This document shows, one piece after another, positions 52,501 to 64,000 of a stretch of 64,000 bases of DNA; the first letter of the stretch is position 1, and every line of letters starts with the position of its first letter. Source of the DNA: Octopus sinensis (Eukaryota); the NCBI RefSeq assembly GCF_006345805.1, contig NC_043026.1, positions 6,510,001 to 6,574,000 on the forward strand, read 5' to 3'. A model generated the notes under the pieces. It had not been told where the DNA came from. It saw only the letters and a list, made by a program, of their open reading frames with translations, and did no database searches. Both the position numbers and the translations under genes were made by a program.

Positions 52501-55500
52501 CTGGAGCGGGTGCAGCAACTCAGAGTTTCCAAACACATAAGAAGTACCTGGTGGAGGAAAGAGAGAGAGAGAGAGAGATGGAGTGTTAGGGGGGAGATAC
52601 AGCATGGTCGTGTAAACGTGTGGGGGGGGGTGCTGTGTATGCGTGCATGGGTCAGTGTCTGAGTGTGGATGTGTGTATATGATTGTACATATGGGTGTGT
52701 GTGTATATGAGTACGTATGTGTATATATGGGTGTGTGTATGAGTATGTATATGAATGCGTGTATAGGTGTGTGTGTGTGTGAAAGATAAATAAATAGGTT
52801 GTATTGTTACCTTGGTAACTATCAAGTTATGATTAAAACTGTGGGAATTTTAAGTGCAAACCTGTTAAAACACTACAACACAAACCTCAAAAAGAGACTA
52901 TTTGGATATATATAACACATAGTCATTAATCTTATGTTGTATGTGGAAGAGATAAGCAGTTGGTATTGCTATTTTAGTAACTAACAACTTTCGATTAAAA
53001 CTGAGCATTTTAAATGCAAGTCTGTTAACACAATGCAACACAGACATCAAAGAGAGACTCTATGCATTTATATAATATACATATATAGGTGCAGGAGTGG
53101 CTGTGTGGTAAATAGGCGCAGGAGTGGCTTTGTGGTAAATAGGCGCAGGAGTGGCTTTGTGGTAAGTAGCTTGCTAACCAACCACATGGTTCCAGGTTCA
53201 GTCCCACTGCATGGCACTTGGGCAAGTGTCTTCTGCTATAGCCTTGGGCCGACCAATGCCTTGTGAGTGGATTTGGTAGACGGAAACTGAAAGAAGCCCG
53301 TTGTATATATGTGTATATATATATATAATACACACACATACATATGTATATATATATATATATATATATACGCACTTATACTCTCTCACTTATACGCACT
53401 TATACTCTCTCACACACACACACACACACCTATACATACCAATACGTACTAATACATACTAATACATACACCAACCCCATACATACGCACGTCCAGACCA
53501 ATCTTACGCACTAATACTTCTCATACCCACACACCCTTATACATACTAATACATACACCAACCCTATACATACACACATCCAGACCCCTCCCACGCACTT
53601 TTAGCTGGTCCCTCAACCCGTTTATCAACCCTATTATCTCCCCTTATTTCGCTCTCGCGTCTCATGTTTGATCTTTGACCTCTGGCCGAAATCAGATCGC
53701 CATGTTGATTCGTTAGCTACTGCACGCATTTTTTTTCTCTCCTTCTTCTGTGTTTTTCTCTCTCTGTGTATCTTTCTGTTGAAGAGCGTAGGCTCGAAAC
53801 GTTAAAGACTTGTTTTATTTATATTTCCTGAGCGCCATACTAATACAATTGTTCGTTTGTTTTCCACCTGCCTTCGTCTTTTGTTTATTTTCATAAAGCT
53901 TCCCGTTATATATATATATATATATATGATGATGGTGATATATATATATGTACAGCAAAAATTTAGATTCGATTGAATATGGTACTTAATTTAGATGCAC
54001 CAGAATTTTGTATGGTGTTATCCATAAAAATTTGTGGGGTGATTATAATCAAAATAAGCAACAAGAACGACTCCGGTTATTTGGTACGATCGTTTCGCAC
54101 TACATCATTTTATTAAAAGTTGTAAGTATTACAACAGATTTAAGATGCTGAGTGCTCATCAGCCAATTATAGAGGTTTTCCATTAATACAAAAATTTTCA
54201 TATCAAGTGGCAACATTATAGAGAAGGTAGATATATAGACAAAGATGTAGATTTAAATTTTAAGAACATATGAGGTAGTGAAGTCCAACCACTGACTGAC
54301 CAAGCTATGGCTGTATCTAACTGCTATAAGGTTAGAAGTAATATTTTGATTATATATATGTATATATGTATATATACATGTGTGTGTGTGTGTGTATGTT
54401 AAACTTGTAATTGTGGTATGTCTGCTGTATTTCTTGATGTTTGGCCATGTTGGCAAAAGGAATCTGCCAGAATTACACATTGCCATACAACGGAAACTGG
54501 AAGAAGCCCTTTGTTTATAGATGTATGTGTGTTTGTCTCCCCAACATTTTGGGTGTCTGTGTATGAATGTGCGTACATGCATGTGTCTGTATGTATTTAT
54601 GTGTATCTGTGTGCAAGTGTGTATGTTTATGTAGATTAATGTGCACGCATGTGTACACGTGTGTGTGTGCGAGCATCTGTGTGTCTAAGACACTTGTGTG
54701 TATATATGTAGATTTGTATGTGTTTATGCATAAATTTGTGTGTGTGAGTGTATATGTGTGTATGCTGGCAAACAAGGCCAGGTGAATGAGTGAATGTAAC
54801 CTGGCCACCTCACCTGGTTCTAATGTCTGTGGTTCGCTGTTATCTTCAGTGTTAGACAGACAATAGGCTTCGTTAGAACTGCAAAAAGAAATGGGGGCTC
54901 ATTTAAATATATATATATATACATAACTGTCTCCCACCTTCTTCTCTTTCTTTGTCCTCCAGGGGTCACCAAGTAAGACAACTATCTCTCGGTGTCTGTC
55001 CATTACACTCTAAACTCTTGCCTGGTATACAACTCCCTCCTTCGGATCCATTCCTTCTCTCAGCTGAGAGGCCTTTGTCCGGAAGGTTACTTGGCAACCC
55101 TGCTGGTGCTGGTGCCACACACATAGTACCTGTGCTGGTACCACATAAAATGGACCTGTGCTGGTTCCATGCAGAAAGCACCTGTGCCATCTCAACGCCA
55201 AAGGCACCTCTGCTAGTGCCACATATGGAGCACATGTGCCCGTGCCACATAAAATGGACCTGCGCTGGTTCCACGCAGAAAGCACCTGTGCCATCTCAAC
55301 GCCAAAGGCACCTCTGCACCCCTCAAATGACAACCTAGACACAGAACAAAGACACACGAAATGGTGCTAAGCATTTTGCCCAGTGAATTAACAATACTGC
55401 CAGTTCGACACCTTCTAATAATAAAAATAATAATAATAATAATCCTTTCTGCTGAAGGTGCAAGGCCTTGAAGTTTTGCGGGGAGGGGACTAGTCGATTA

Positions 55501-57430
55501 CATCGACCCCAGTGCATAACTGGTATTTAATTTACCGACCCTGAAAGGATGAAAAGCAAAGTCGACCTCAGTGGAATTTGAACTCAGAACACAGCGGGCG
55601 AAATACTGCTAAGCATTTCACCTGGCGTGCTAATGATTCTGCCAGCTCACAGCCTTTATAATAATAATAATAATAATAATAATTTTTTCTATTGTAGGCA
55701 CAAGGCTTCAAATTTGGGGGAAGGAATTAAGTTGATTACATCGGCCCCAGTGCATAACTGGTACTTGTTTAATCAACACTGAAAGGATGAAAGGCAACAC
55801 TGACATCAAATAATAATAATAGTAGTAATAATAATAATAATAATAATAATAATCTACAGACATTTTAGGAAGTCAGTAGAACTTACCTGAGATCCATTAA
55901 GACAATAGTAAAAGGTGAGAAATCTGTGCGGAGAGAGGCTAAGGTGTTAGAGTAAGACACAGCAGTATATTGGTCATTATTCAAATAATCAGACACAAGT
56001 TGACCTTGGAATGGAAAGAAAGAGAGTGCCGTAAGAAACAGAGATACAAATATGTGTGCGTGTGTGTGTGTTTGGATGGATGGATGGATTGATTGATAGA
56101 GAGACAGGTAGCTAAAAAGACAGACCAGGTAGCTAGAGAGATAGACAGAAAGATAGAGAGATGGCGAGCTGGCAGAAACGTTAGCACGTCGGGCGAAATG
56201 CTTAGCGGTATCTCGTCTGCCGCTACGTTCTGAGTTCAAATTCTGCCGAGGTCGACTTTGCCTTTCATCCTTTCAGGGTCGATTAAATAAGTACCAGTTA
56301 CACACTGGGGGTCGATGTAATTGACTTAACCCGTTTGTCTGTCCTTGTTTGTCCTCTCTGTGTTTAGCCCCTTGTGGGTAATAAAGAAATAGGTATTTTG
56401 TCTGCCGTTACGTTCTGAGTTCAAATTCCGCCGAGGTCGACTTTGCCTTTCATCCTTTCAGGGTCGATTAAATAAGTACCAGTTACGCACTGGGGTCAAT
56501 GGAATTGACTTAACCCGTTTGTCTGTCCTTGTTTGTCCCCTCTGTGTTTAGCCCCTTGTGGGTAATAAAGAAACAAATCATGCTTCACCAACTCGTCCTA
56601 TGTCTTCCTGGGTCTACCTCTTCCACAGGTCCCTTCCAATGTTAGAGATCAGCACTTCTTTACCTAGCTGTCCTCGTCCAAACGCATCATATAACCATAT
56701 CCGTGCAGTCGTCTCTCTTGCACACCACATCTGATGCCTCTTATGCCCAGCTTTTCTCTCAAGATGCTTACACTCTGTCGAACAGACACACTGACATTGC
56801 ACATCCAGCGAAGCACACTACCTTCATTTCTTTCAAGCTTGTGTGTGTGTGTGTGTGTGTGTGTGTAATGAAGACAAAATCAAAACCAAGGACAGTTCAC
56901 CTACCACGATGCTTCTTGGAAGGGTCTGGTTCTTCACAGTAAATGTTTAGTAAACAAGATAATTTACCATTCCGGTTCACAGCTAGCCACGTTCCACCTT
57001 CTCGTCCCTCCATAAGATCCATACCTTGATGAAACAAAACATGCAGAAGAGCTAAAGACAGTGTCGGTTGATTAGGTATACAAATTCACACATTTTTAAA
57101 CGCAGCTTTACATCACCGTCACCCGCCAACACCATCATCATATCAACATTATCATGATCATCAAAGCTGGCAGAATCGTTAGCTCGCTGGGCGAAATGCT
57201 TAGTGGTATTTCATCTGCCACTATGTTCTGAGATCAAATCCCGCTGTAGCTGACTTTGCCTTTCATCCTTTCAGGGTCAATAAATTAAGTAACAGTGAAA
57301 GCACTTGGGTTGACGTAATCAACTAGTCCCCTACCCCCATATTTCAGGCCTTGTGCCGTTAAGAGAAAGGACTATTATTATCATTATTATTATTGTTATC
57401 ATCATTATCATTGTTATTATTATTATTACA

Positions 57431-57465
<35 letters not shown>

Positions 57466-60400
57466 CATTATTATTATTATTATTCAGCGTCGCCTCGACT
57501 GGCTTCTGTGCCAGTGGCACATAAAAAGCACCATCCGAACGTGGCCGATGCCAGCGCCGCCTTGGCTGGCTTCCGTGCTGGTGGCACGTTAAAAGCACCA
57601 ACCGATCGTGGCTGATGCCAGACTCCCCTGGCACCTGTGCCGGTGGCACGTAAAAAGCACCCACTACACTTGCGCGGAGTGGTTGGCGTTAGGAAGGGCA
57701 TCCAGCTGTAGAAACACTGCCAGATCAGACTGGAGCCTGGTGCAGCCCCTGACTTCCCAGAACCCGGTCAAACCGTCCAACCTGTGCTAGCGCAGAAAAA
57801 CAGACGTTAAACGATGATGATGATGATTATTATCATTATTATTATTATTGTTATATTATCATTATTGTTATTATTATTATTATTATTCTATGTTTGACTT
57901 TTGCTTTATATTTGTACAAGTTGGCTCCAAGTCTCACCCAGAGACCTCAAGAGACAACAGGGTTGGAAGTTCATGTTGTTGTTATGCCTAGTGTGCCATA
58001 TATTTGGGGGGTGGGGATGTTGTACTAATGAATGTCTAAAAAAAAAAGTTTTTTTTTTTTTTAAACCGAAAATTATGGTTGTTTTAAACCTTGAGGTTAC
58101 ATAGAGAGTATTTTGCGTAGGATATGAGCAGTTCCCATGAGCACTATCTTTTGAACTTCTGCCATTTTTGGGTTTCCTGGTATCTGAGTTAGGTAGCCAT
58201 CAGCCCCTTTTGCTATCATTCCCAGGGCACCTATGACAACAGGTATTGTTTTAGTCTTCAGCTTCCACATTTTGCTGATTTCTATTTCAAGATCTTTATA
58301 TTTGCTCAGTTTTTGGCAGGTCCTGACAGATACGTTTATATCGATTGGGACAGTCATATCAATGAGGAGGCATGTTATTGTTTGAAGTCTTTCAATATGA
58401 TGTCTGGCCTATTTGCATCTATCTTCCTGTCAGTTTGAATGGTGAAGTTCCAGAGGAGTGAGATGTGGTCATTTTCAAGCACTGGGGGTGGTTTGTGTTC
58501 CCACCAGTTTTTTTCATGGGGCAAATCCAGGTTTTTACAGATTACCCAGTGAATATATTGTGCAGCTCTATCGTGCCTGTTGAGATACTCTGTAGGCGCT
58601 AGAAGACTGCACTTGGAGACCACATGGTCAATGGTTTCATTTTGTTGCTTGCATACACGACACGTTGGACTGCTTCTGATCTTTAATATGTTGGCCTGGT
58701 AGTTTCTTGTTGGTAGGCATTGATCTTGAGCTGCTATGATAAACCCCTCTGTTTCAGATTTTAAGCCAGAGGCCATTAGCCATTGATGGGTCAGGGCTTT
58801 GTCGATATCTGCATTATTCGCTCTCTTTGGGTATTTGCCATAGAGAGGTTTTTCTTGCCATTTATTATTCAGAATATCTAAGGCCGCAGTTTTGGCACGG
58901 GTTTTCATGCGCCTAGCTTTTTCTGTGCTTGTTTCTTGTATGTCTATCTCTAATTCCGAAATTGGTTGTATTCGGAATTCACTTAGATATTCCTTTGCCT
59001 GTTTTGTGACTGAGTATGATGCTTTCTTGTTTTCATGTTTTGAGACAAGTTTTAACATCCAGTCCTCAGAGTTTTTCAGGTAGGTGTCTAGGCCAATTGT
59101 AGCAATCTTCATTGTTATTGCCAGTTGCAAAAGACCACGGCCTCCCTCTTTTCTTGGCAGATAGAGTCGTTCTGTATCTGCCTTAGGGTGGTGCATTCTA
59201 TGCATTGTCAACAGTTTCCTTATTTTTCTGTCGAGCTGACATATTTCAGTAATTGACCAGTTAACAATATTGAAACTGTAAGTCACGACTGGTATAGCTA
59301 ATGCATTGATTGCTTCGATCCTGTTTCTTGCATTCAGCTCTGTCTTGAGTATTGCTCTCACTCTTCGATAGCATTCTCTCCTGATCCTTTCCTTCATCTC
59401 TGAATGCCTTATTCCGTTCCCTTCAATTACCCCTAGGTACTTGTAGCTCTCCGCTGGGTCTAGTTCTTTTATGACATTCTGTTGGTCAAGGTTAACGTTA
59501 GATGTTTCTGTCATTTTTCCTTTGATAAAGGTAGCCTTTGCACATTTATCGAGGCCGAATTGCATTCTGATGTCGTCACTGAATTGTTTGACTATCGCTA
59601 GTAAGCCCTTGAGTTGTTGATCATTTTTTGCAAAAAGCTTTAAATCATCCATGTAAATGAGATGATTTATATTTTTATCAAACATTTTATATCCGTACTG
59701 CGCGTCATTGAGCAGCTTTGAGAGAGGTATTAAGGATAAACAAAAGAGGAGTGGTGACAGTGAGTCACCCTGGAAAATGCCACACGAAATTTTTACATCA
59801 CCAGCATTTAGGGATTCACTGTCACTGTTCAGAGTTAGTGTGGTTCTCCATGATCTCATACTTACAGTCAAGAAGTTTCGCAGAGTTGGTGCTATCTTAT
59901 ACATTTCAAGGCATTTCCTAATCCAGCTATGTGGTAGGCTATCAAAAGCCTTTTTATAGTCTATCCAGGCTATTGATAAGTTTTTGTGTCGTTTGTGACA
60001 AAGCTATTGATAAGTTTTTGTGTCGTTTGTGACAAGAGTGTCGTTTGTGACAATTATTATTATTATTATTATTATTATTGTTATTATTGTTATTATTATC
60101 ATTATTATTATTATTATTATTGTTATTATTATCATTATTGTTATTATTATTATTATTGTTATTATTATTATTATTGTTATTATTATTGCTATTGTCATTA
60201 CTGTTATTATTATTATCATCATAATTATTATTATTATTATAATTATTATTGTTATTATTATTATTATTAATGTGGTGAGCTGGTAAACAAGCAAAAGATA
60301 AAAGAAAACAAGAAATACTGCTTACCACCAATACACTGGGGATTGTCCTTCCAGAATCCGAGGGGCAACGTGAGCCGATCCCAGCTTTCATCACGGACAT

Positions 60401-60467
60401 TGGCTAAGATCAGGCGATATTTATCTGGCGAAGGATCCGCAAGGAAATGGAAGAAGAGCATACACAT
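49375..60467 (-). CDS. TANGO2: Transport and Golgi organization protein 2 homolog (NRDE family), 7 exons, 831 nt, 276 aa
   Basis: N-terminus MCMLFF, LILANVRDE, EGREGGTWL, RTHTVLLVDGDG and ERT match TANGO2. All introns are GT-AG and the frame stays open to TAG at 49375. Confidence 0.95.
50487..50864 (+). mobile_element. Non-autonomous Helitron
   Basis: A|TC ... hairpin CTAG|T. Confidence 0.85.
51104..51199 (-). CDS. TANGO2: TANGO2 exon 6 (YYDQEYSQKFPSFNSTIPYIYFQCEEERRGSR)
   Basis: tatccag acceptor, gtaaaa donor, 96 nt, phase-compatible on both sides; weak similarity. Confidence 0.8.
52388..52547 (-). CDS. TANGO2: TANGO2 exon 5 (TSYVFGNSELLHPLQKVCKGKELFDD...MMMNKEP)
   Basis: ccaccag acceptor, gtaaga donor, 160 nt. 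Confidence 0.92.
53771..53808 (+). ncRNA. Degenerate hammerhead motif (core CUGUUGA) in a Penelope-like repeat
   Basis: tcttt CTGTTGA a gagc-gtag-gctc GAAA CG T T aaaga. Confidence 0.45.
54814..54878 (-). CDS. TANGO2: TANGO2 exon 4 (SNEAYCLSNTEDNSEPQTLEPG)
   Basis: tttttgcag acceptor, gtgagg donor, 65 nt; joins phase 2 to phase 1 as required. Confidence 0.9.
55887..56004 (-). CDS. TANGO2: TANGO2 exon 3 (QLVSDYLNNDQYTAVSYSNTLASLRTDFSPFTIVLMDLS)
   Basis: ttccaag acceptor, gtaagt donor, 118 nt. Confidence 0.92.
56905..57024 (-). CDS. TANGO2: TANGO2 exon 2 (GMDLMEGREGGTWLAVNRNGKLSCLLNIYCEEPDPSKKHRG)
   Basis: tcaag acceptor, gtaggt donor, 120 nt. Confidence 0.94.
57888..60052 (-). mobile_element. 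5'-truncated non-LTR retrotransposon, R4/Dong-like (RT plus CCHC plus restriction-like endonuclease)
   Basis: ORF 59904-58375 has GIFQGDSLSP, YMDDLKL, CRVC...TIDHVVSKC and RPDI. It continues after a 1-nt frameshift into DMTVP...KLSKYKDL...VVIGALG (58357-58097). (AAT)n flanks both ends. Confidence 0.9.
60326..60467 (-). CDS. TANGO2: TANGO2 coding exon 1 (MCMLFFHFLADPSPDKYRLILANVRDESWDRLTLPLGFWKDNPQCIG)
   Basis: ATG at 60467, donor gtaagc. An acceptor-like ctctccctttctctcccaatag at about 60489 implies an upstream UTR exon. Confidence 0.94.
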
Positions 60468-60568
60468 CGTCAGGATGAGCGTGTCCCCCTATTGGGAGAG
60501 AAAGGGAGAGAGATGTAGCAAAACAACCAACCAATGGGGGGACGTTCAGATTAGTCGGCCCCTGGAGG

Positions 60569-60867
60569 TATGTGGCACTAGCACAGGTGCCTTTGACGTT
60601 GGACTGGCACAGGTGCTTTCTGCGTGGCACCAGCACAGGTCCATTTACGTGGCACTAACACGGGTACTATTTGTGTGGCACCAGCACCAGCAGGGTTGCC
60701 AAGTAACCTGCCAGACAAAGGCCTTTCAGTTGAGAGAAGGAATGGATCCGAAGGAGGGAGTTGTATACCAGGCAAGAGGTTAGAGTGTAATGAACAGACC
60801 CAGAGAAATAGTTGTCTTACTTGGTGACCCCTGGAGGACAAAGAAAGAGAAGAAGGTGGGAGAGAGT

Positions 60868-60909
<42 letters not shown>

Positions 60910-61050
60910 GAGCCCCCATTTCTTTTTGCAGTTCTAACGAAGCCTATTGTCTGTCTAACACTGAAGATAACAGCGAACCACAGACATTAGAACCAGGTGA
61001 GGTGGCCAGGTTACATTCACTCATTCACCTGGCCTTGTTTGCCAACATAC
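60569..61050 (+). pseudogene. Inverted duplicate of TANGO2 intron 3 end, exon 4 and intron 4 start (exon copy at 60932-60996)
   Basis: Reverse complement of about 54741-55226; 60907-61044 is identical to 54766-54903. Confidence 0.93.
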
Positions 61051-61299
61051 ACAGACACACACTCACACAGTGTATGGTGTTCTGACATCACCTCACACAA
61101 AACCAATGAAATTTTCCCTCTGGTCAGAACTGGGCCCTAAGAAAAATACAGGCCGTGACTTCTTAAGAATGGTAGATGACTATCATGCCAAGACAAATTA
61201 TAGAGTCCCTACAAGGAAGTCGACCAAGCAGAACACTGGACTTGACCCTAGTTGAATCGTCGGGTGACATGCAGTGCTTGAGGACACCTGTTGAGTGAA

Positions 61300-62155
61300 G
61301 TAAATCAATCGAATCACAATCAAATGGAAATTGTAGTTGTGGCCGATACCAGTGCCACCTGATTGGCCCCTGTGACGGTGGCACGTAAAAAGCACCATCT
61401 GAATGTGGCCGATACTAGTGCCGTCTGACTGGCTCCCATGCTGGTGGCACCTAAAAAGCACCATCCAAACGTGGATGATACCAGCTCCCATGCTGGCGGT
61501 ACATAAAAAGCACCATCCAAATATGGCCGATGCCAGTGCTGCCTGACTGGCTCTCGTGCCAGTGGCACGTAAAAAGCACCATCTGAATGTGGCCGATACT
61601 AGTGCCGCCTGACTGGCTCCCATGCTGGTGGCACCTAAAAAGCACCATCCAAACATGGATGATACCAGCTCCTATGCTGGCGGTACGTAAAAAGCACCAT
61701 CTGAATGTGGCCGATACTAGTGCCGCCTGACTGGCTCCCATGCTGGTGGCACCTAAAAAGCACCATCCAAACATGGATGATACCAGCTCCTATGCTGGCG
61801 GTACGTAAAAAGCACCATCTGAATGTGGCCGATACTAGTGCCGCCTGACTGGCTCCCATGCTGGTGGCACCTAAAAAGCACCATCCAAACATGGATGATA
61901 CCAGCTCCTATGCTGGCGGTACGTAAAAAGCACCATTTGAATGTGGCCGATGCCAGTGCTGCCTGACTGGCTATCGTGCCAGTGGCACGTAAAAAGCACC
62001 CACTAACACTCAGAGTGGTTGGCGATAGGGAAGGCATCAAGTTGTAGAAACTTTGCCAGATCAGATTGGAACCTGGTGTGGCCTCCTGGCTTGCCAGCCC
62101 TCAGTCAACCTGTCCAACCCATGCCAGCATGGAAAGCAGATGTTAAACGATGATG
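61300..62155 (+). mobile_element. RTE-type 3' end with an expanded internal array (higher-order unit of about 119 bp)
   Basis: Repeated AAAAGCACCATC...GTGGCAC units followed by the same RTE-type tail. Confidence 0.7.
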
Positions 62156-62756
62156 AAATCGTAAAGCATTAGCTATGAGCAGATGGCATTTCCACCTGCC
62201 TAATGTCAGTAGCACCACAAGAATGGTTCTGTGAAACAAGGGAGGTTTTTTTGCGGCCTCCTGTATATTCGCCTAATCTGTGTGTGGGATGGTCATGCAG
62301 TCATGCTTTTGCTATTAAAAATTTAATGGTTCAAAGTTAATCTGGGTTAAACGACGACAACAATAAGGCCTTTCTACATGGTCGTCCAGACTGCTAGACA
62401 TAGCAACCAAATGTAGAAACAAACAAATGAATAGGCGCAGGAGTGGCTGTGTGGTAAGTAGCTTAAAAACTGATGTAATACTTACATTGTTTAATAAAAT
62501 GAAGTAGCATGAAACGATTGTACTACACTACCTTGGATATCCTTGTTGCTTATTTTGATTATATGTACATATATATTTATGTATGCACGCAGGAGTGGCT
62601 GTGTGGTAAGTAGCTTGCTAACCAACCACATAGTTCCAGGTTCAGTCCCACTGCGTGGCATCTTGGGCAAGTGTCTTCTGCTATAGCCCCGGGCCGACCA
62701 ATGCCTTGTGAGTGGATTTGGTAGACGGAAACTGAAAGAAGCCTGTCGTATATATG

Positions 62757-62787
<31 letters not shown>

Positions 62788-64000
62788 TTGTGTTTGTCTC
62801 CCTAGCATTGCTTGACAACCGATGCTGGTGTGTTTACGTCCCCGTCACTTAGCGGTTCGGCAAAAGAGACCGATAGAATAAGTATTGGGCTTACAAAGAA
62901 TAAGTCCCGGGGTCGATTTGGTCGACTAAAGGCGGTGTTCCAGCATGGCCACAGTCAAATGACTGAAACAAGTAAAAGAGAGAAAAGAGAATATTTAAGA
63001 ATTCCAAAATAAAACCTAACATAATTTGGACTTTGGTAATCAGCTTCGTTTGTGAATATAAGACATTAAAAATGGGGCACATTGCACAATGTAGTCCAAA
63101 GGAAAAAGATGAGATGCTCATTCTGTCATGTTTTTGATATCAAAGATCTTTTGGTTCAAGTTTAAGCTGTGTTAAGAAGAAAAATAATCAGCAGAAGACG
63201 AGAGAAGGAGACCTCAATGTGGTCACTCTATATGCTAGAAATAATAGCCTAAATTTCCTTCAATCCACATCCTTCCAACTGCTTTTAATGTGCATCTGCC
63301 CAAATGTAGAATTGTGCGTAACCCTTTCGATGCCAACCCGGCTGAAACCACCTCTGGCTCTGTAGTACAAATGTCTTGTTTTCATAAGTTCTGAATTAAA
63401 ATCTTCCACCAAACTTTAGTCACAATTTATGTTCCTAACACTAGCTTAATGATAACCAAGTTATTTTACTAAATTCTTTCTTATATTTAAAATTAATTGA
63501 AAGAGACACAGAGCATCTCAACAGAAATATGGTAACGAAAGGGTTAAGAAGAAAAATAATCAGCAAAAGACATCAGAGAAGGAGACCTCAATGTGGTCAT
63601 TCTATATGCTAGAAATAATAGCCTAAATTTCCTTCAATCCACACCCTTCCAACTGCTTTTAATGTGCATCTGCCCAAATGTAGAATAGTGTGTAACCCTT
63701 TCGATACCAAACTGGCTCTGGCTCTGAGAACAAATGTCCTGTTTTCATAAGTTTTTAATTAAAATCTTCCACCAAACCTTAGTCACAATTTATGTTCCTA
63801 ACACTGTCATTCTACAGTCCAAATAATAAACCAGTGCATATCCGAGAAGAAAGCGAGGCCCTTAATAAAATAATCTTTGAGTTGTTGTAACATTATTGAA
63901 GGCCCCCCCCCAAAAAAACCTTGGGCGAAGTGGCAAGGTTGGAGGTTTTACATTTTTTTTCTACTGACAGCAAACGACAACCGACAAAAATTGGCAATGG

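What the first reader, a model, noticed from the sequence alone, without database searches (positions are those of the whole stretch)
54741..61050. Inverted copy of TANGO2 exon 4, with both splice sites, just upstream of the ATG exon
Seen: 60569-61050 is the reverse complement of about 54741-55226. The 138 bp covering the 65-nt exon 4, its pyrimidine tract, acceptor and donor (54766-54903 vs 60907-61044) are identical. The adjoining ~200 bp of intron differ at roughly 10 positions and the repeat part differs more. An acceptor-like signal 21 nt before the ATG implies a 5' UTR intron that may contain the copy. Inference: the pre-mRNA could form a ~480-bp duplex. It might (a) act as an editing-complementary sequence for A-to-I recoding of exon 4, since coleoids are known for extensive ADAR recoding, (b) hide exon 4, whose skipping shifts the frame, or (c) bring the ATG-exon acceptor and the exon 3 donor together for a ~401-nt circRNA. 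Perfect identity over the exon alone hints at selection or gene conversion.
Basis: partly seen in the sequence, partly recalled or inferred. Interest (0 to 1): 0.8.

Follow-up and report, generated by a model that had tools for sequence, protein, structure and literature searches.

The report
Inverted copy of TANGO2 exon 4
In Octopus sinensis, a 501-bp stretch holding exon 4 of the TANGO2 gene was copied in reverse orientation to a spot 101 bases before the gene's start codon; the copy is real and species-lineage-specific, its perfect 138-bp core is best explained by recent gene conversion, and no function can be shown from sequence alone.

Summary
Window 60569-61069 is the reverse complement of 54741-55226, which holds TANGO2 exon 4 (54814-54878, minus strand) plus 348 nt of intron 3 and 73 nt of intron 4. 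A 138-nt core (54766-54903 vs 60907-61044) is identical. The remaining 323 nt differ by 24 substitutions (7.4%).

The window is Octopus sinensis GCA_006345805.1. The O. bimaculoides orthologue has a clean empty site, so the copy is an insertion on the O. sinensis side of the ~34-My split. It has no target-site duplication or microhomology and no other copies in the DNA I could read. It is therefore not a transposon, and its diverged arms rule out an assembly artefact.

The identical core runs from a (TA)n length difference to 25 nt from the arm's end. It carries a base (codon 145, ACA) that O. bimaculoides and O. vulgaris lack. This fits arm-to-arm gene conversion within about 2.5 My on a duplication roughly 15-25 My old, rather than constraint on the exon.

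A pyrimidine-rich AG|G site 21 nt before the ATG is conserved in O. bimaculoides, so a 5'UTR intron containing the copy is plausible but unproven. I could reach no transcript data. The editing, exon-hiding and circRNA ideas remain untested.

The parts
54741..55226 (-). Source arm: last 348 nt of TANGO2 intron 3, exon 4, and first 73 nt of intron 4
   Evidence: repeat arms; exon model. The part from 54659 to about 55000 is orthologous to O. bimaculoides L002 11330-11639.
54814..54878 (-). TANGO2 coding exon 4, 65 nt, encoding SSNEAYCLSNTEDNSEPQTLEPG together with the bases it shares with neighbouring exons
   Evidence: the exact spliced model equals P0001/XP_029653413.1; translation.
60569..61069 (+). 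Inverted copy (501 bp). The exon 4 sense strand lies on the + strand, so the copy is antisense to TANGO2 transcription. It is an insertion relative to O. bimaculoides.
   Evidence: Empty site: O. bimaculoides reads ...CCATACAC-ATTCTCAA-CCTCCAGG..., and O. sinensis has 501 bp in place of the 8 bp.
60932..60996 (+). Exact copy of exon 4 (pseudo-exon) with intact acceptor and donor signals on the + strand
54766..54903 (.). 138-nt core identical to 60907-61044. It is bounded by a C/T difference 25 nt from the arm's end and by the (TA)n tract.
60907..61044 (.). 138-nt identical core in the copy
60868..60906 (.). (TA)n microsatellite in the copy, 17 nt longer than its counterpart at about 54904-54925. 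It marks one end of the identical tract.
60326..60488 (-). ATG exon: 21 nt of 5'UTR after the acceptor-like TCTCTCTCCCTTTCTCTCCCAATAG|G, then 142 nt of CDS (ATG at 60467)
   Evidence: model; 18 of 20 pyrimidines, and only 2.6% of AGs on this strand reach 16 of 20. O. bimaculoides keeps the pyrimidine tract and CAG|G.
56905..57024 (-). TANGO2 coding exon 2 (120 nt)
55887..56004 (-). TANGO2 coding exon 3 (118 nt). Its donor lies 660 nt upstream of the source arm.
61070..61150 (-). Single-copy block directly upstream of the insertion. Its last 66 nt (61070-61135) differ from O. bimaculoides at only 2 positions. It may be a proximal promoter or a 5'UTR element.
   Evidence: alignment. (61344-61070: 8.1% substitutions).

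Best explanation
This is a real, lineage-specific inverted intragenic duplication.

Origin. On the O. sinensis side of the split from O. bimaculoides, a ~500-bp piece of TANGO2 was inserted in reverse orientation 5.3 kb away. The piece holds the end of intron 3, exon 4 and the start of intron 4. It landed 101 nt upstream of the start codon and replaced 8 bp. The joints are blunt, with no target-site duplication and no visible microhomology. That points to capture or templated copying of a nearby fragment during double-strand-break repair (inferred), not to transposition.

Evolution. The arms then diverged to about 7%. The 138 bp between a (TA)n length difference and the end of homology was recently re-homogenised by arm-to-arm gene conversion. 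The exon sits in that interval by position, not because it is protected. I think the copy is most likely a nearly neutral by-product with no evolved function.

Consequences, all inferred. The conserved acceptor-like site 21 nt before the ATG suggests that the TANGO2 primary transcript starts upstream of 61069 (I put this at about 0.6). In that case the copy lies in a 5'UTR intron, and the pre-mRNA holds two ~480-nt complementary arms 5.3 kb apart. The most likely consequence is then the generic one for nearby inverted repeats: promiscuous ADAR editing of both arms, including exon 4. Some E1-E3 back-splicing or exon 4 skipping would be minor, probably unselected, side products.
For: Shown:
- The arms and their identity profile.
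- The window is 100% identical to O. sinensis CM016888.1.
- O. bimaculoides has a clean empty site and only one exon 4.
- Neither joint has a TSD or microhomology.
- No other copy exists in the 64-kb window, the extra 6.5 kb of L001 or the 25 kb of L002.
- Flank divergence between arms is 7.4%, against 8-13% non-coding substitution divergence between the two species. The species split about 34 My ago (PMC10700109). That puts the duplication at roughly 15-25 My.
- The substitution-free run is improbable: P = 0.0014-0.003, or 0.006 with a fully constrained source.
- The 138-nt core differs from O. bimaculoides at 8 substitutions plus 1 indel, about as much as the flanking intron. Constraint therefore does not explain 0/138.
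- Codon 145 reads TTA in O. bimaculoides (DNA) and Ile (AT-) in O. vulgaris CAI9742958.1. It reads ACA in both O. sinensis arms. The shared derived C dates homogenisation to after the ~2.5-My sinensis/vulgaris split.
- The acceptor-like site is strong and conserved.
- Two RefSeq protein accessions share one sequence, which hints at transcript variants differing in UTRs.
- Predicted duplex: 467 intermolecular pairs, net -586 kcal/mol over the self-folds.

Established knowledge:
- A-to-I editing mainly targets dsRNA formed by young, nearby inverted repeats across metazoans, O. bimaculoides among the species profiled (PMC9989829).
- Flanking reverse-complementary sequences promote exon circularisation, and ADAR antagonises it (PMC5042038).
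Against: - No RNA evidence of any kind was reachable, so the TSS, editing, skipping and back-splicing are all unknown.
- I could not fetch an independent assembly. The O. vulgaris locus look-up failed, so presence in a second genome is predicted, not shown.
- The codon-145 argument rests on one site and on a protein model for O. vulgaris.
- The coincidence of the perfect block with exon 4 and both splice sites could still reflect selection for a perfect duplex.
- The joints are roughly 15-25 My old and one lies in GT-rich low-complexity DNA, so original microhomology may have been erased.
- Divergence rises with distance from the core (5.2%, 6.0%, 10.2%). That may mean repeated conversion events or rate variation, so the age estimate is rough.
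Confidence: 0.6

Rival explanations
1. The copy is not part of the TANGO2 pre-mRNA. Transcription would start between 60569 and the ATG, or the AG|G is not a splice site. The insert would then be a 501-bp insertion in the proximal promoter with no RNA-level role. Any effect would come from displacing the conserved upstream block (61070-61150) by 500 bp.
For: - No annotated CDS or known exon lies within 10 kb upstream.
- An ATTGG (inverted CCAAT) about 70 nt before the ATG is conserved in both species, as in short-UTR TATA-less promoters.
- The 66 nt directly upstream of the insertion are unusually conserved (2 differences), as a promoter element might be.
Against: - The acceptor-like site has 18 of 20 pyrimidines followed by AG|G, and it keeps its AG in O. 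bimaculoides although neighbouring bases changed.
- The 81 nt between the insert and that site are not conserved (14.8% substitutions), which fits a core promoter poorly.
- A CpG-rich, single-copy, conserved block with a conserved G|GTGAGAGT lies 3.6 kb upstream (window 64114). It could supply a 5'UTR exon.
Confidence: 0.3
2. The copy is an evolved long-range editing-complementary or editing-inducer element. The duplex would recruit ADAR to recode TANGO2 exon 4, and the perfect core would be kept by selection.
For: - The exon and its splice sites are perfectly complementary over 138 nt, within a 480-nt duplex.
- Exon 4 has 24 adenosines in 65 nt.
- Coleoids edit heavily, and nearby inverted copies are the main source of ADAR substrates (PMC9989829).
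Against: - The copy is absent from O. bimaculoides, so it is not a conserved ECS.
- A long perfect duplex is expected to give promiscuous rather than site-selective editing (established knowledge of ADAR).
- The limits of the identical block coincide with a microsatellite indel and the end of homology.
- Exon 4 is not strongly constrained: residue 145 is T, I and L in three species.
- The upstream arm sits in an intron that may be spliced out before the downstream arm, 5.3 kb further on, is transcribed (inference).
Confidence: 0.1
3. The arms act on splicing. Pairing would sequester both splice sites of exon 4 and cause frame-shifting skipping. Alternatively it would bring the exon 3 donor and the ATG-exon acceptor together to make a 401-nt E1-E3 circular RNA at meaningful levels.
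For: - The geometry fits intron-pairing-driven circularisation. The upstream arm ends 80 nt before the E1 acceptor, and the downstream arm starts 660 nt after the E3 donor.
- Repeats of 30-40 nt suffice for circularisation in other systems (PMC5042038).
- Both exon 4 splice sites lie inside the perfect core.
Against: - Transcription of the upstream arm is unproven.
- Very stable pairing can impede circularisation, and ADAR antagonises it (PMC5042038).
- Competing inverted SINE-like pairs flank exon 3 and exons 2-3 at shorter range (55492-55597 vs 56405-56510 and 56220-56310; 55519-55597 vs 57218-57296).
- Strong exon 4 skipping would cut TANGO2 output, yet the arrangement has persisted for millions of years (inference).
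Confidence: 0.12
4. The copy is an assembly artefact, such as a fold-back or chimeric long read, or a misplaced haplotig.
For: The only assembly I could read is a PacBio plus Hi-C assembly (PMC10700109), and inverted duplications are a known artefact class (my own knowledge). No independent assembly was reachable.
Against: - The arms are 5.3 kb apart and differ at 7.4% outside the core, with a 17-nt microsatellite difference. An artefact would give near-identical arms.
- The insert has precise borders against a clean empty site in O. bimaculoides.
- There are no Ns in the window.
Confidence: 0.03
5. The copy was moved by a transposable element, either by transduction of flanking exon sequence or as part of a composite element.
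For: - The distal 55000-55340 part of the source arm is absent from O. bimaculoides and contains a 104-nt tandem duplication, as some elements do.
- The region is rich in SINE-like repeats.
Against: - There is no target-site duplication, no terminal repeats and no poly(A) at either joint.
- No further copies of 54765-55340 exist in about 95 kb of octopus DNA examined.
- The proximal 260 nt of the arm are ordinary orthologous intron and exon.
Confidence: 0.03

Closest known systems
Pairs of inverted repeats in pre-mRNA (for example inverted Alu pairs in primates, or young inverted repeats in metazoans generally) that form long dsRNA, are promiscuously edited by ADAR and promote back-splicing
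   Same: Two arms of about 480 nt in opposite orientation lie a few kb apart in one gene, and the predicted duplex is very stable. The arms bracket exons E1-E3 as reverse-complementary sequences do around circularised exons (PMC5042038, PMC9989829).
   Different: The arms are not transposon copies. One arm is a working coding exon with its splice sites, so any editing would recode protein and any pairing would mask splice sites. Co-transcription of the two arms is not shown.
Mouse Sry inverted repeats that drive circularisation of the Sry transcript
   Same: A locus-specific (non-TE) inverted duplication flanks the sequence that would be circularised (PMC5042038).
   Different: Sry arms are tens of kb long (my own knowledge) and flank a single exon, and the circle is documented. 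Here the arms are 0.5 kb, one arm contains an exon downstream of the putative circle, and no circle has been observed.
Editing-complementary sequences (ECS) of site-selective recoding sites such as GluA2 Q/R, and intronic editing-inducer elements
   Same: A non-coding sequence complementary to an exon, possibly in an intron of the same gene.
   Different: Classical ECS are short, imperfect and conserved with the edited site, and usually lie in the adjacent intron (my own knowledge). This one is long and perfect, sits 5.3 kb away across three exons, and is absent from O. bimaculoides.
Arm-to-arm gene conversion in palindromes and inverted segmental duplications (for example the human Y-chromosome palindromes)
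   Same: A tract of complete identity between inverted paralogous arms that are otherwise diverged. The tract carries a lineage-specific derived base in both arms.
   Different: The scale is 0.5 kb rather than tens to hundreds of kb. Only part of the arm is homogenised. One arm is a functional exon, so conversion could move mutations from a pseudo-exon into the coding sequence.
Hairpin-RNA or young MIRNA loci born by inverted duplication of a target gene segment (plants; Drosophila hpRNAs)
   Same: An inverted duplicate of part of a protein-coding gene that could form a long hairpin with the parental sequence.
   Different: In those cases the two arms are adjacent and form an independent hairpin transcript processed into small RNAs (my own knowledge). 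Here the second arm is the parental gene itself, 5.3 kb away, and there is no small-RNA evidence.

Membership tests
Real inverted segmental duplication (as opposed to an assembly artefact) | Arms show independent divergence and have defined insertion borders against an orthologous empty site | tested here: met
   The arms differ by 24 substitutions in 323 nt plus a 17-nt microsatellite indel. The O. bimaculoides empty site is shown.
Real inverted segmental duplication (as opposed to an assembly artefact) | Present in an independent assembly or in spanning long reads | not testable with these tools
   L001 is the same assembly as the window. The O. vulgaris locus is not on record. No Logan contigs were found.
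Transposable-element insertion or transduction | Target-site duplication, terminal repeats or a poly(A) tail, and multiple copies | tested here: not met
   The joints read CCATACAC|TGTGTGAG and GCCACATA|CCTCCAGG with no TSD. There is no other copy in the window, L001 or L002. A genome-wide copy number could not be checked.
Gene-conversion tract between paralogous arms | A run of identity significantly longer than expected from the flanking divergence | tested here: met
   The run is 138-140 nt. P = 0.0014-0.003 by permutation, and 0.006 with a fully constrained source.
Gene-conversion tract between paralogous arms | The identity is not explained by purifying selection on the tract | tested here: met
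   The core differs from O. bimaculoides at 8 substitutions plus 1 indel in 138 nt, similar to the flanking intron. Exon 4 residues 131 and 145 vary among species.
Gene-conversion tract between paralogous arms | Both arms share a derived state younger than the duplication | tested here: inconclusive
   The second base of codon 145 is T in O. bimaculoides DNA and in O. vulgaris (Ile), and C in both O. sinensis arms. This is one site, and the O. vulgaris state is known only from a protein model.
Editing-complementary sequence of a recoding site | Complementary to the edited exon | tested here: met
   The perfect 138-nt complement includes all of exon 4.
Editing-complementary sequence of a recoding site | Lies in the same primary transcript as the exon | not testable with these tools
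   The TSS is unknown. A conserved acceptor-like site suggests an upstream exon but does not prove one.
Editing-complementary sequence of a recoding site | A-to-I editing observed at the paired exon | not testable with these tools
   No RNA data were available. No paper in the library mentions both TANGO2 and octopus.
Editing-complementary sequence of a recoding site | Conserved together with the exon in related species | tested here: not met
   O. bimaculoides has exon 4 but no inverted copy within 10 kb upstream of the gene's annotated CDS or within the gene itself.
Reverse-complementary sequences driving exon circularisation | Complementary arms lie upstream of the back-splice acceptor and downstream of the back-splice donor | tested here: met
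   The upstream arm ends 80 nt before 60488. The downstream arm starts 660 nt after the exon 3 donor. This holds only if the upstream arm is transcribed.
Reverse-complementary sequences driving exon circularisation | Back-splice junction detected | not testable with these tools
   No RNA data.
TANGO2 (Pfam PF05742) gene | The spliced product matches the family, and exon 4 is a genuine coding exon | tested here: met
   The spliced model equals P0001, which carries PF05742. Homologues in annelids and molluscs match with E-values from 1e-30 to 1e-43.

The most novel reading that the evidence does not exclude
The inverted copy is a recently born, functionally recruited RNA element. It would be transcribed in a 5'UTR intron and kept perfectly complementary to exon 4 by concerted evolution. 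It would drive ADAR recoding of TANGO2 exon 4, or tune exon 4 inclusion or an E1-E3 circle, in the O. vulgaris/sinensis lineage. That would be a caught-in-the-act example of a new editing-complementary or structure element arising by inverted duplication of an exon. Gene conversion would also let the pseudo-exon feed substitutions (perhaps I145T) into the coding exon.
Probability: 0.1. Interest if true: 0.7.

Novelty: new member of a known kind. Interest (0 to 1): 0.35.

Why it matters
If both arms are in one transcript, this is a natural experiment. A working coding exon and both its splice sites would be locked in a perfect 138-bp duplex in one octopus lineage, while a close relative (O. bimaculoides) lacks the partner arm. 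Comparing exon 4 editing, exon 4 skipping and circular RNA between the species would show directly what a new long-range inverted repeat does to a cephalopod pre-mRNA. It would also show whether exon-derived inverted duplications can seed new ADAR substrates.

Independently of RNA, the locus is a compact example of concerted evolution between an exon and its pseudo-exon, where conversion can carry neutral changes into a coding sequence. If the copy is not transcribed or has no effect, it is an ordinary structural variant in a repeat-rich genome.

Tried and rejected
- O. vulgaris locus. The exact look-up of CAI9742958.1 (P0011) was not on record, so there is no independent assembly and no sister-species identity profile.
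- Logan or other contigs. I tried the exact genomic ORF over the ATG exon, a homology search with the E1+E2 peptide and a search with the 146-aa ORF crossing the 60569 joint. None gave an octopus hit beyond the two RefSeq models, so there are no transcripts, 5'UTR or reads.
- Rfam on 53000-64000 gave no family.
- No paper in the library holds both 'TANGO2' and 'octopus'.
- The bacterial-type promoter and terminator scan is not informative for an animal gene.
- The 94.6%-conserved block at 63502-63319 looked like a possible 5'UTR exon, but it is duplicated in O. sinensis (63805-63689) and has no convincing exon features. I dropped it.
- Retro-copy of an edited RNA is rejected. Arm differences show no excess of sense-strand A-to-G (3 against 7 G-to-A), and the copy contains intron sequence.
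- The CCAAT and CRE motifs upstream of the insert are not reliable. The only two substitutions in that conserved block fall in those motifs.
- Purifying selection on the exon as the cause of the 138-nt identity is rejected.

Full report
**1. Observation**

The inverted repeat is real. The repeat finder reports three collinear inverted blocks:
- 54741-54903 vs 60907-61069 (163 nt, 98%)
- 54901-55149 vs 60644-60892 (249 nt, 93%)
- 55148-55225 vs 60569-60646 (78 nt, 91%)

A global alignment of 54741-55226 with the reverse complement of 60569-61069 gives 28 substitutions, a 17-nt (TA)n length difference and two single-base indels. The substitutions are distributed as follows:

| Source interval | Length | Substitutions | Note |
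|---|---|---|---|
| 54741-54765 | 25 nt | 4 | GT-rich, at the arm's end |
| 54766-54903 | 138 nt | 0 | identical core |
| 54904-55099 | 196 nt | 11 | |
| 55100-55226 | 127 nt | 13 | |

The 65-nt exon is copied exactly at 60932-60996 on the + strand, with its acceptor (TTTTTGCAG|) and donor (|GTGAGG). Nothing else in the 64-kb window resembles 54765-55340.

**2. The gene**

A probe with human TANGO2 located the exons. A database search returned the Octopus sinensis protein XP_029653413.1 (P0001, PF05742). An exact spliced model on the minus strand reproduces that protein residue for residue:

| Exon | Coordinates | Length |
|---|---|---|
| E1 | 60467-60326 | 142 nt |
| E2 | 57024-56905 | 120 nt |
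| E3 | 56004-55887 | 118 nt |
| E4 | 54878-54814 | 65 nt |
| E5 | 52547-52388 | 160 nt |
| E6 | 51199-51104 | 96 nt |
| E7 | 49504-49375 | 130 nt |

- Exon 4 is 65 nt, so skipping it shifts the frame.
- An AG|G preceded by 18 pyrimidines in 20 lies 21 nt before the ATG (exon start 60488). Only 2.6% of AG dinucleotides on this strand reach 16 of 20.
- The copy ends 80 nt upstream of that acceptor-like site.
- The source arm begins 660 nt downstream of the exon 3 donor.
- 5342 nt separate the arms.

**3. Where the window comes from, and the empty site**

The window is 100% identical to O. sinensis GCA_006345805.1, CM016888.1. Locus L001 is therefore the same assembly, extended 6.5 kb upstream.

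The O. bimaculoides orthologue (L002) is collinear. Window 61344-61070 aligns to L002 8452-8699, and window 60569-60285 aligns to L002 8707-9004. Joining the two O. sinensis flanks and aligning them to O. bimaculoides shows a clean empty site:
- O. bimaculoides reads ...CCATACAC-ATTCTCAA-CCTCCAGG...
- O. sinensis has the 501-bp insert in place of the 8 bp.

O. bimaculoides has a single exon 4, at the orthologous place. The copy is therefore a derived insertion on the O. sinensis side of the split.

The joints carry no target-site duplication, terminal repeat, poly(A) or microhomology. That speaks against transposition. It favours capture or templated copying of a nearby fragment during break repair, which is an inference. 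The joints are old, and one lies in GT-rich low-complexity DNA.

The distal third of the source arm (about 55000-55340) is absent from O. bimaculoides. It contains a 104-nt tandem duplication, of which the copy carries one unit plus 15 nt. The inverted duplication therefore followed those changes.

**4. Not an artefact**

- The arms are 5.3 kb apart.
- They differ at 7.4% outside the core and in microsatellite length.
- The insert has exact borders against an empty site.
- The window has no Ns.

A fold-back or chimeric-read artefact would give near-identical arms. I could not obtain an independent assembly, because the O. vulgaris protein look-up failed. That confirmation is still owed.

**5. 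Age**

- Substitution-only divergence between O. sinensis and O. bimaculoides in eight non-coding or mixed segments of this locus is 5-15%, mostly 8-13%.
- The two lineages split about 34 My ago, and O. sinensis and O. vulgaris about 2.5 My ago (PMC10700109).
- Arm-to-arm flank divergence of 5-10% (mean 7.4%) then puts the duplication at very roughly 15-25 My.
- In the part of the flank where O. bimaculoides can serve as outgroup, changes shared by both arms and changes private to one arm are about equally common. This fits that age.
- The copy is therefore predicted to be present in O. vulgaris.

**6. The identical core**

- Zero substitutions in 138 nt is improbable at the flank rate (Poisson 3.5e-5). 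The longest-run permutation gives P = 0.0014-0.003.
- It stays improbable (0.006) even if the source arm were completely frozen by selection and only the copy could change.
- The core is not frozen. It differs from O. bimaculoides at 8 substitutions and 1 indel, including 3 substitutions in the exon. That is about the same rate as the adjoining intron.
- Two exon 4 residues vary among species: A/V at 131, and T/I/L at 145.
- The limits of the core are structural. One end is the (TA)n tract, where the arms differ by 17 nt. The other end is 25 nt from the end of homology. A conversion tract would be expected to stop at such points.
- The second base of codon 145 is T in O. bimaculoides (TTA, seen in DNA) and T in O. 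vulgaris (Ile in CAI9742958.1). It is C in both O. sinensis arms (ACA). The simplest reading is one T-to-C change on the O. sinensis branch (under 2.5 My) that gene conversion spread to the other arm. The direction is unknown, and the pseudo-exon may have donated it to the coding exon.

I conclude that the 'perfect identity over the exon' is a recent arm-to-arm gene-conversion tract. The exon lies inside it by position. This rests on one polarised site and on statistics, so selection for a perfect duplex is not excluded.

**7. Is the copy transcribed with TANGO2?**

For an upstream start:
- The acceptor-like site is strong. In O. bimaculoides the pyrimidine tract and an AG|G are kept although adjacent bases changed.
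- The 81 nt between the insert and that site are poorly conserved (14.8%), unlike a core promoter.
- Two RefSeq protein accessions share one sequence, which suggests transcript variants differing in UTRs.
- A CpG-rich (observed/expected up to 1.65), single-copy block conserved with O. bimaculoides lies at window 65028-63808. It contains a conserved G|GTGAGAGT at about 64114, just beyond the window.

For a downstream start:
- An inverted CCAAT about 70 nt before the ATG is conserved.
- The 66 nt directly upstream of the insert are unusually conserved (2 differences), as a proximal promoter might be.

I put the probability that the copy is in the pre-mRNA at about 0.6. Three attempts to find transcripts or independent contigs gave nothing.

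**8. What it would do if transcribed**

- The two arms are predicted to pair almost completely: 467 intermolecular pairs of 501, cofold -904 kcal/mol, net -586 over the self-folds, and -278 for the core alone.
- Across metazoans, A-to-I editing mainly hits dsRNA formed by young, nearby inverted repeats; O. bimaculoides was among the species profiled (PMC9989829). The default expectation is promiscuous editing of both arms, including the 24 adenosines of exon 4. Site-selective recoding is not the default.
- The arms bracket E1-E3 in the arrangement that promotes intron-pairing-driven circularisation. Very stable pairing can impede circularisation, and ADAR antagonises it (PMC5042038).
- Shorter-range inverted SINE-like pairs flank exon 3 and exons 2-3 and would compete.
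- Both splice sites of exon 4 lie in the perfect core, so some skipping is conceivable. Strong skipping would lower TANGO2 output, yet the arrangement has persisted for millions of years (inference).
- The upstream arm may be spliced out before the downstream arm is made (inference).

**9. Comparison with known systems**

The locus works, if at all, like an inverted Alu-type pair or the Sry inverted repeats. It evolves like a small palindrome with arm-to-arm conversion.

It fails the conservation test for a classical editing-complementary sequence, because it is absent from O. bimaculoides. It also fails every test for a transposon insertion.

Its unusual feature is that one arm is a functional coding exon with its splice sites.

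**10. Verdict**

The structure is a real, lineage-specific inverted exon duplication with a gene-conversion signature. The functional readings are untested and individually unlikely. The finding is of moderate interest, mainly as a clean natural experiment (one species with the arm, one without) that public RNA data could resolve quickly.

Noticed in passing
window 55492-55597 vs 56405-56510 and 56220-56310; 55519-55597 vs 57218-57296: Inverted SINE-like repeat pairs (82-87% complementary, 79-106 nt) flank exon 3 and exons 2-3 of TANGO2. They are shorter-range reverse-complementary matches that would compete with the exon 4 arms, and they could themselves favour small circles.
   Followed up: partly
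L002 13071-13454 (O. bimaculoides): An assembly gap lies where TANGO2 exon 5 should be. The O. bimaculoides RefSeq model (P0002, 145 aa) starts in exon 2 and joins exon 4 to exon 6 out of frame, so it is probably a gap-induced mis-annotation rather than a real isoform.
   Followed up: partly
L001 5440-6660 (window 65028-63808, mostly beyond the window end): A single-copy block conserved with O. bimaculoides. It has CpG observed/expected up to 1.65, a telomere-like AACCCTAACCCTAAAC motif and a conserved G|GTGAGAGT. It is a candidate TANGO2 promoter or first non-coding exon.
   Followed up: partly
window 61361-62030 and 57497-57691: A tandem array of alternating 66- and 52-nt units (GTGGCACGTAAAAAGCACC motif) lies just upstream of the inverted copy. 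Related units occur in intron 1 in the same orientation, and an 85% match follows both (57677-57747 vs 62013-62083).
   Followed up: no
window 62990-62590, 52241-51847, 44633-44250, 43303-42944, 41340-40967, 40537-40143, 32915-32602, 19972-19553, 12625-12250: A SINE-like family of about 390 bp with at least nine copies in both orientations (85-95% identity). It is also present in O. bimaculoides.
   Followed up: no
window 59992-60322: A long (ATT)n-rich microsatellite (16% GC) begins immediately after the exon 1 donor. A similar tract lies at 57334-57520.
   Followed up: no
window 63805-63689 and 63502-63319: Two copies in O. sinensis of a block that is single in O. bimaculoides (L002 6071-6259). 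The second copy is 94.6% identical to the O. bimaculoides sequence.
   Followed up: partly
window 55107-55314: A 104-nt tandem duplication (89% identity) lies inside the source arm. The inverted copy holds one unit plus 15 nt of the next, so the tandem duplication predates the inverted one.
   Followed up: partly
window 54832-54834 (codon 145 of TANGO2, in exon 4): The only residue that differs between O. sinensis and O. vulgaris TANGO2 lies in exon 4. It is T in O. sinensis, I in O. vulgaris and L in O. bimaculoides.
   Followed up: yes
window about 45390 down to below 39375, + strand (L001 25078-31093): The next annotated gene downstream of TANGO2 encodes a protein of about 190 aa with no Pfam hit on record. 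Its orthologue sits in the same position in O. bimaculoides (L002 17124-23003).
   Followed up: no
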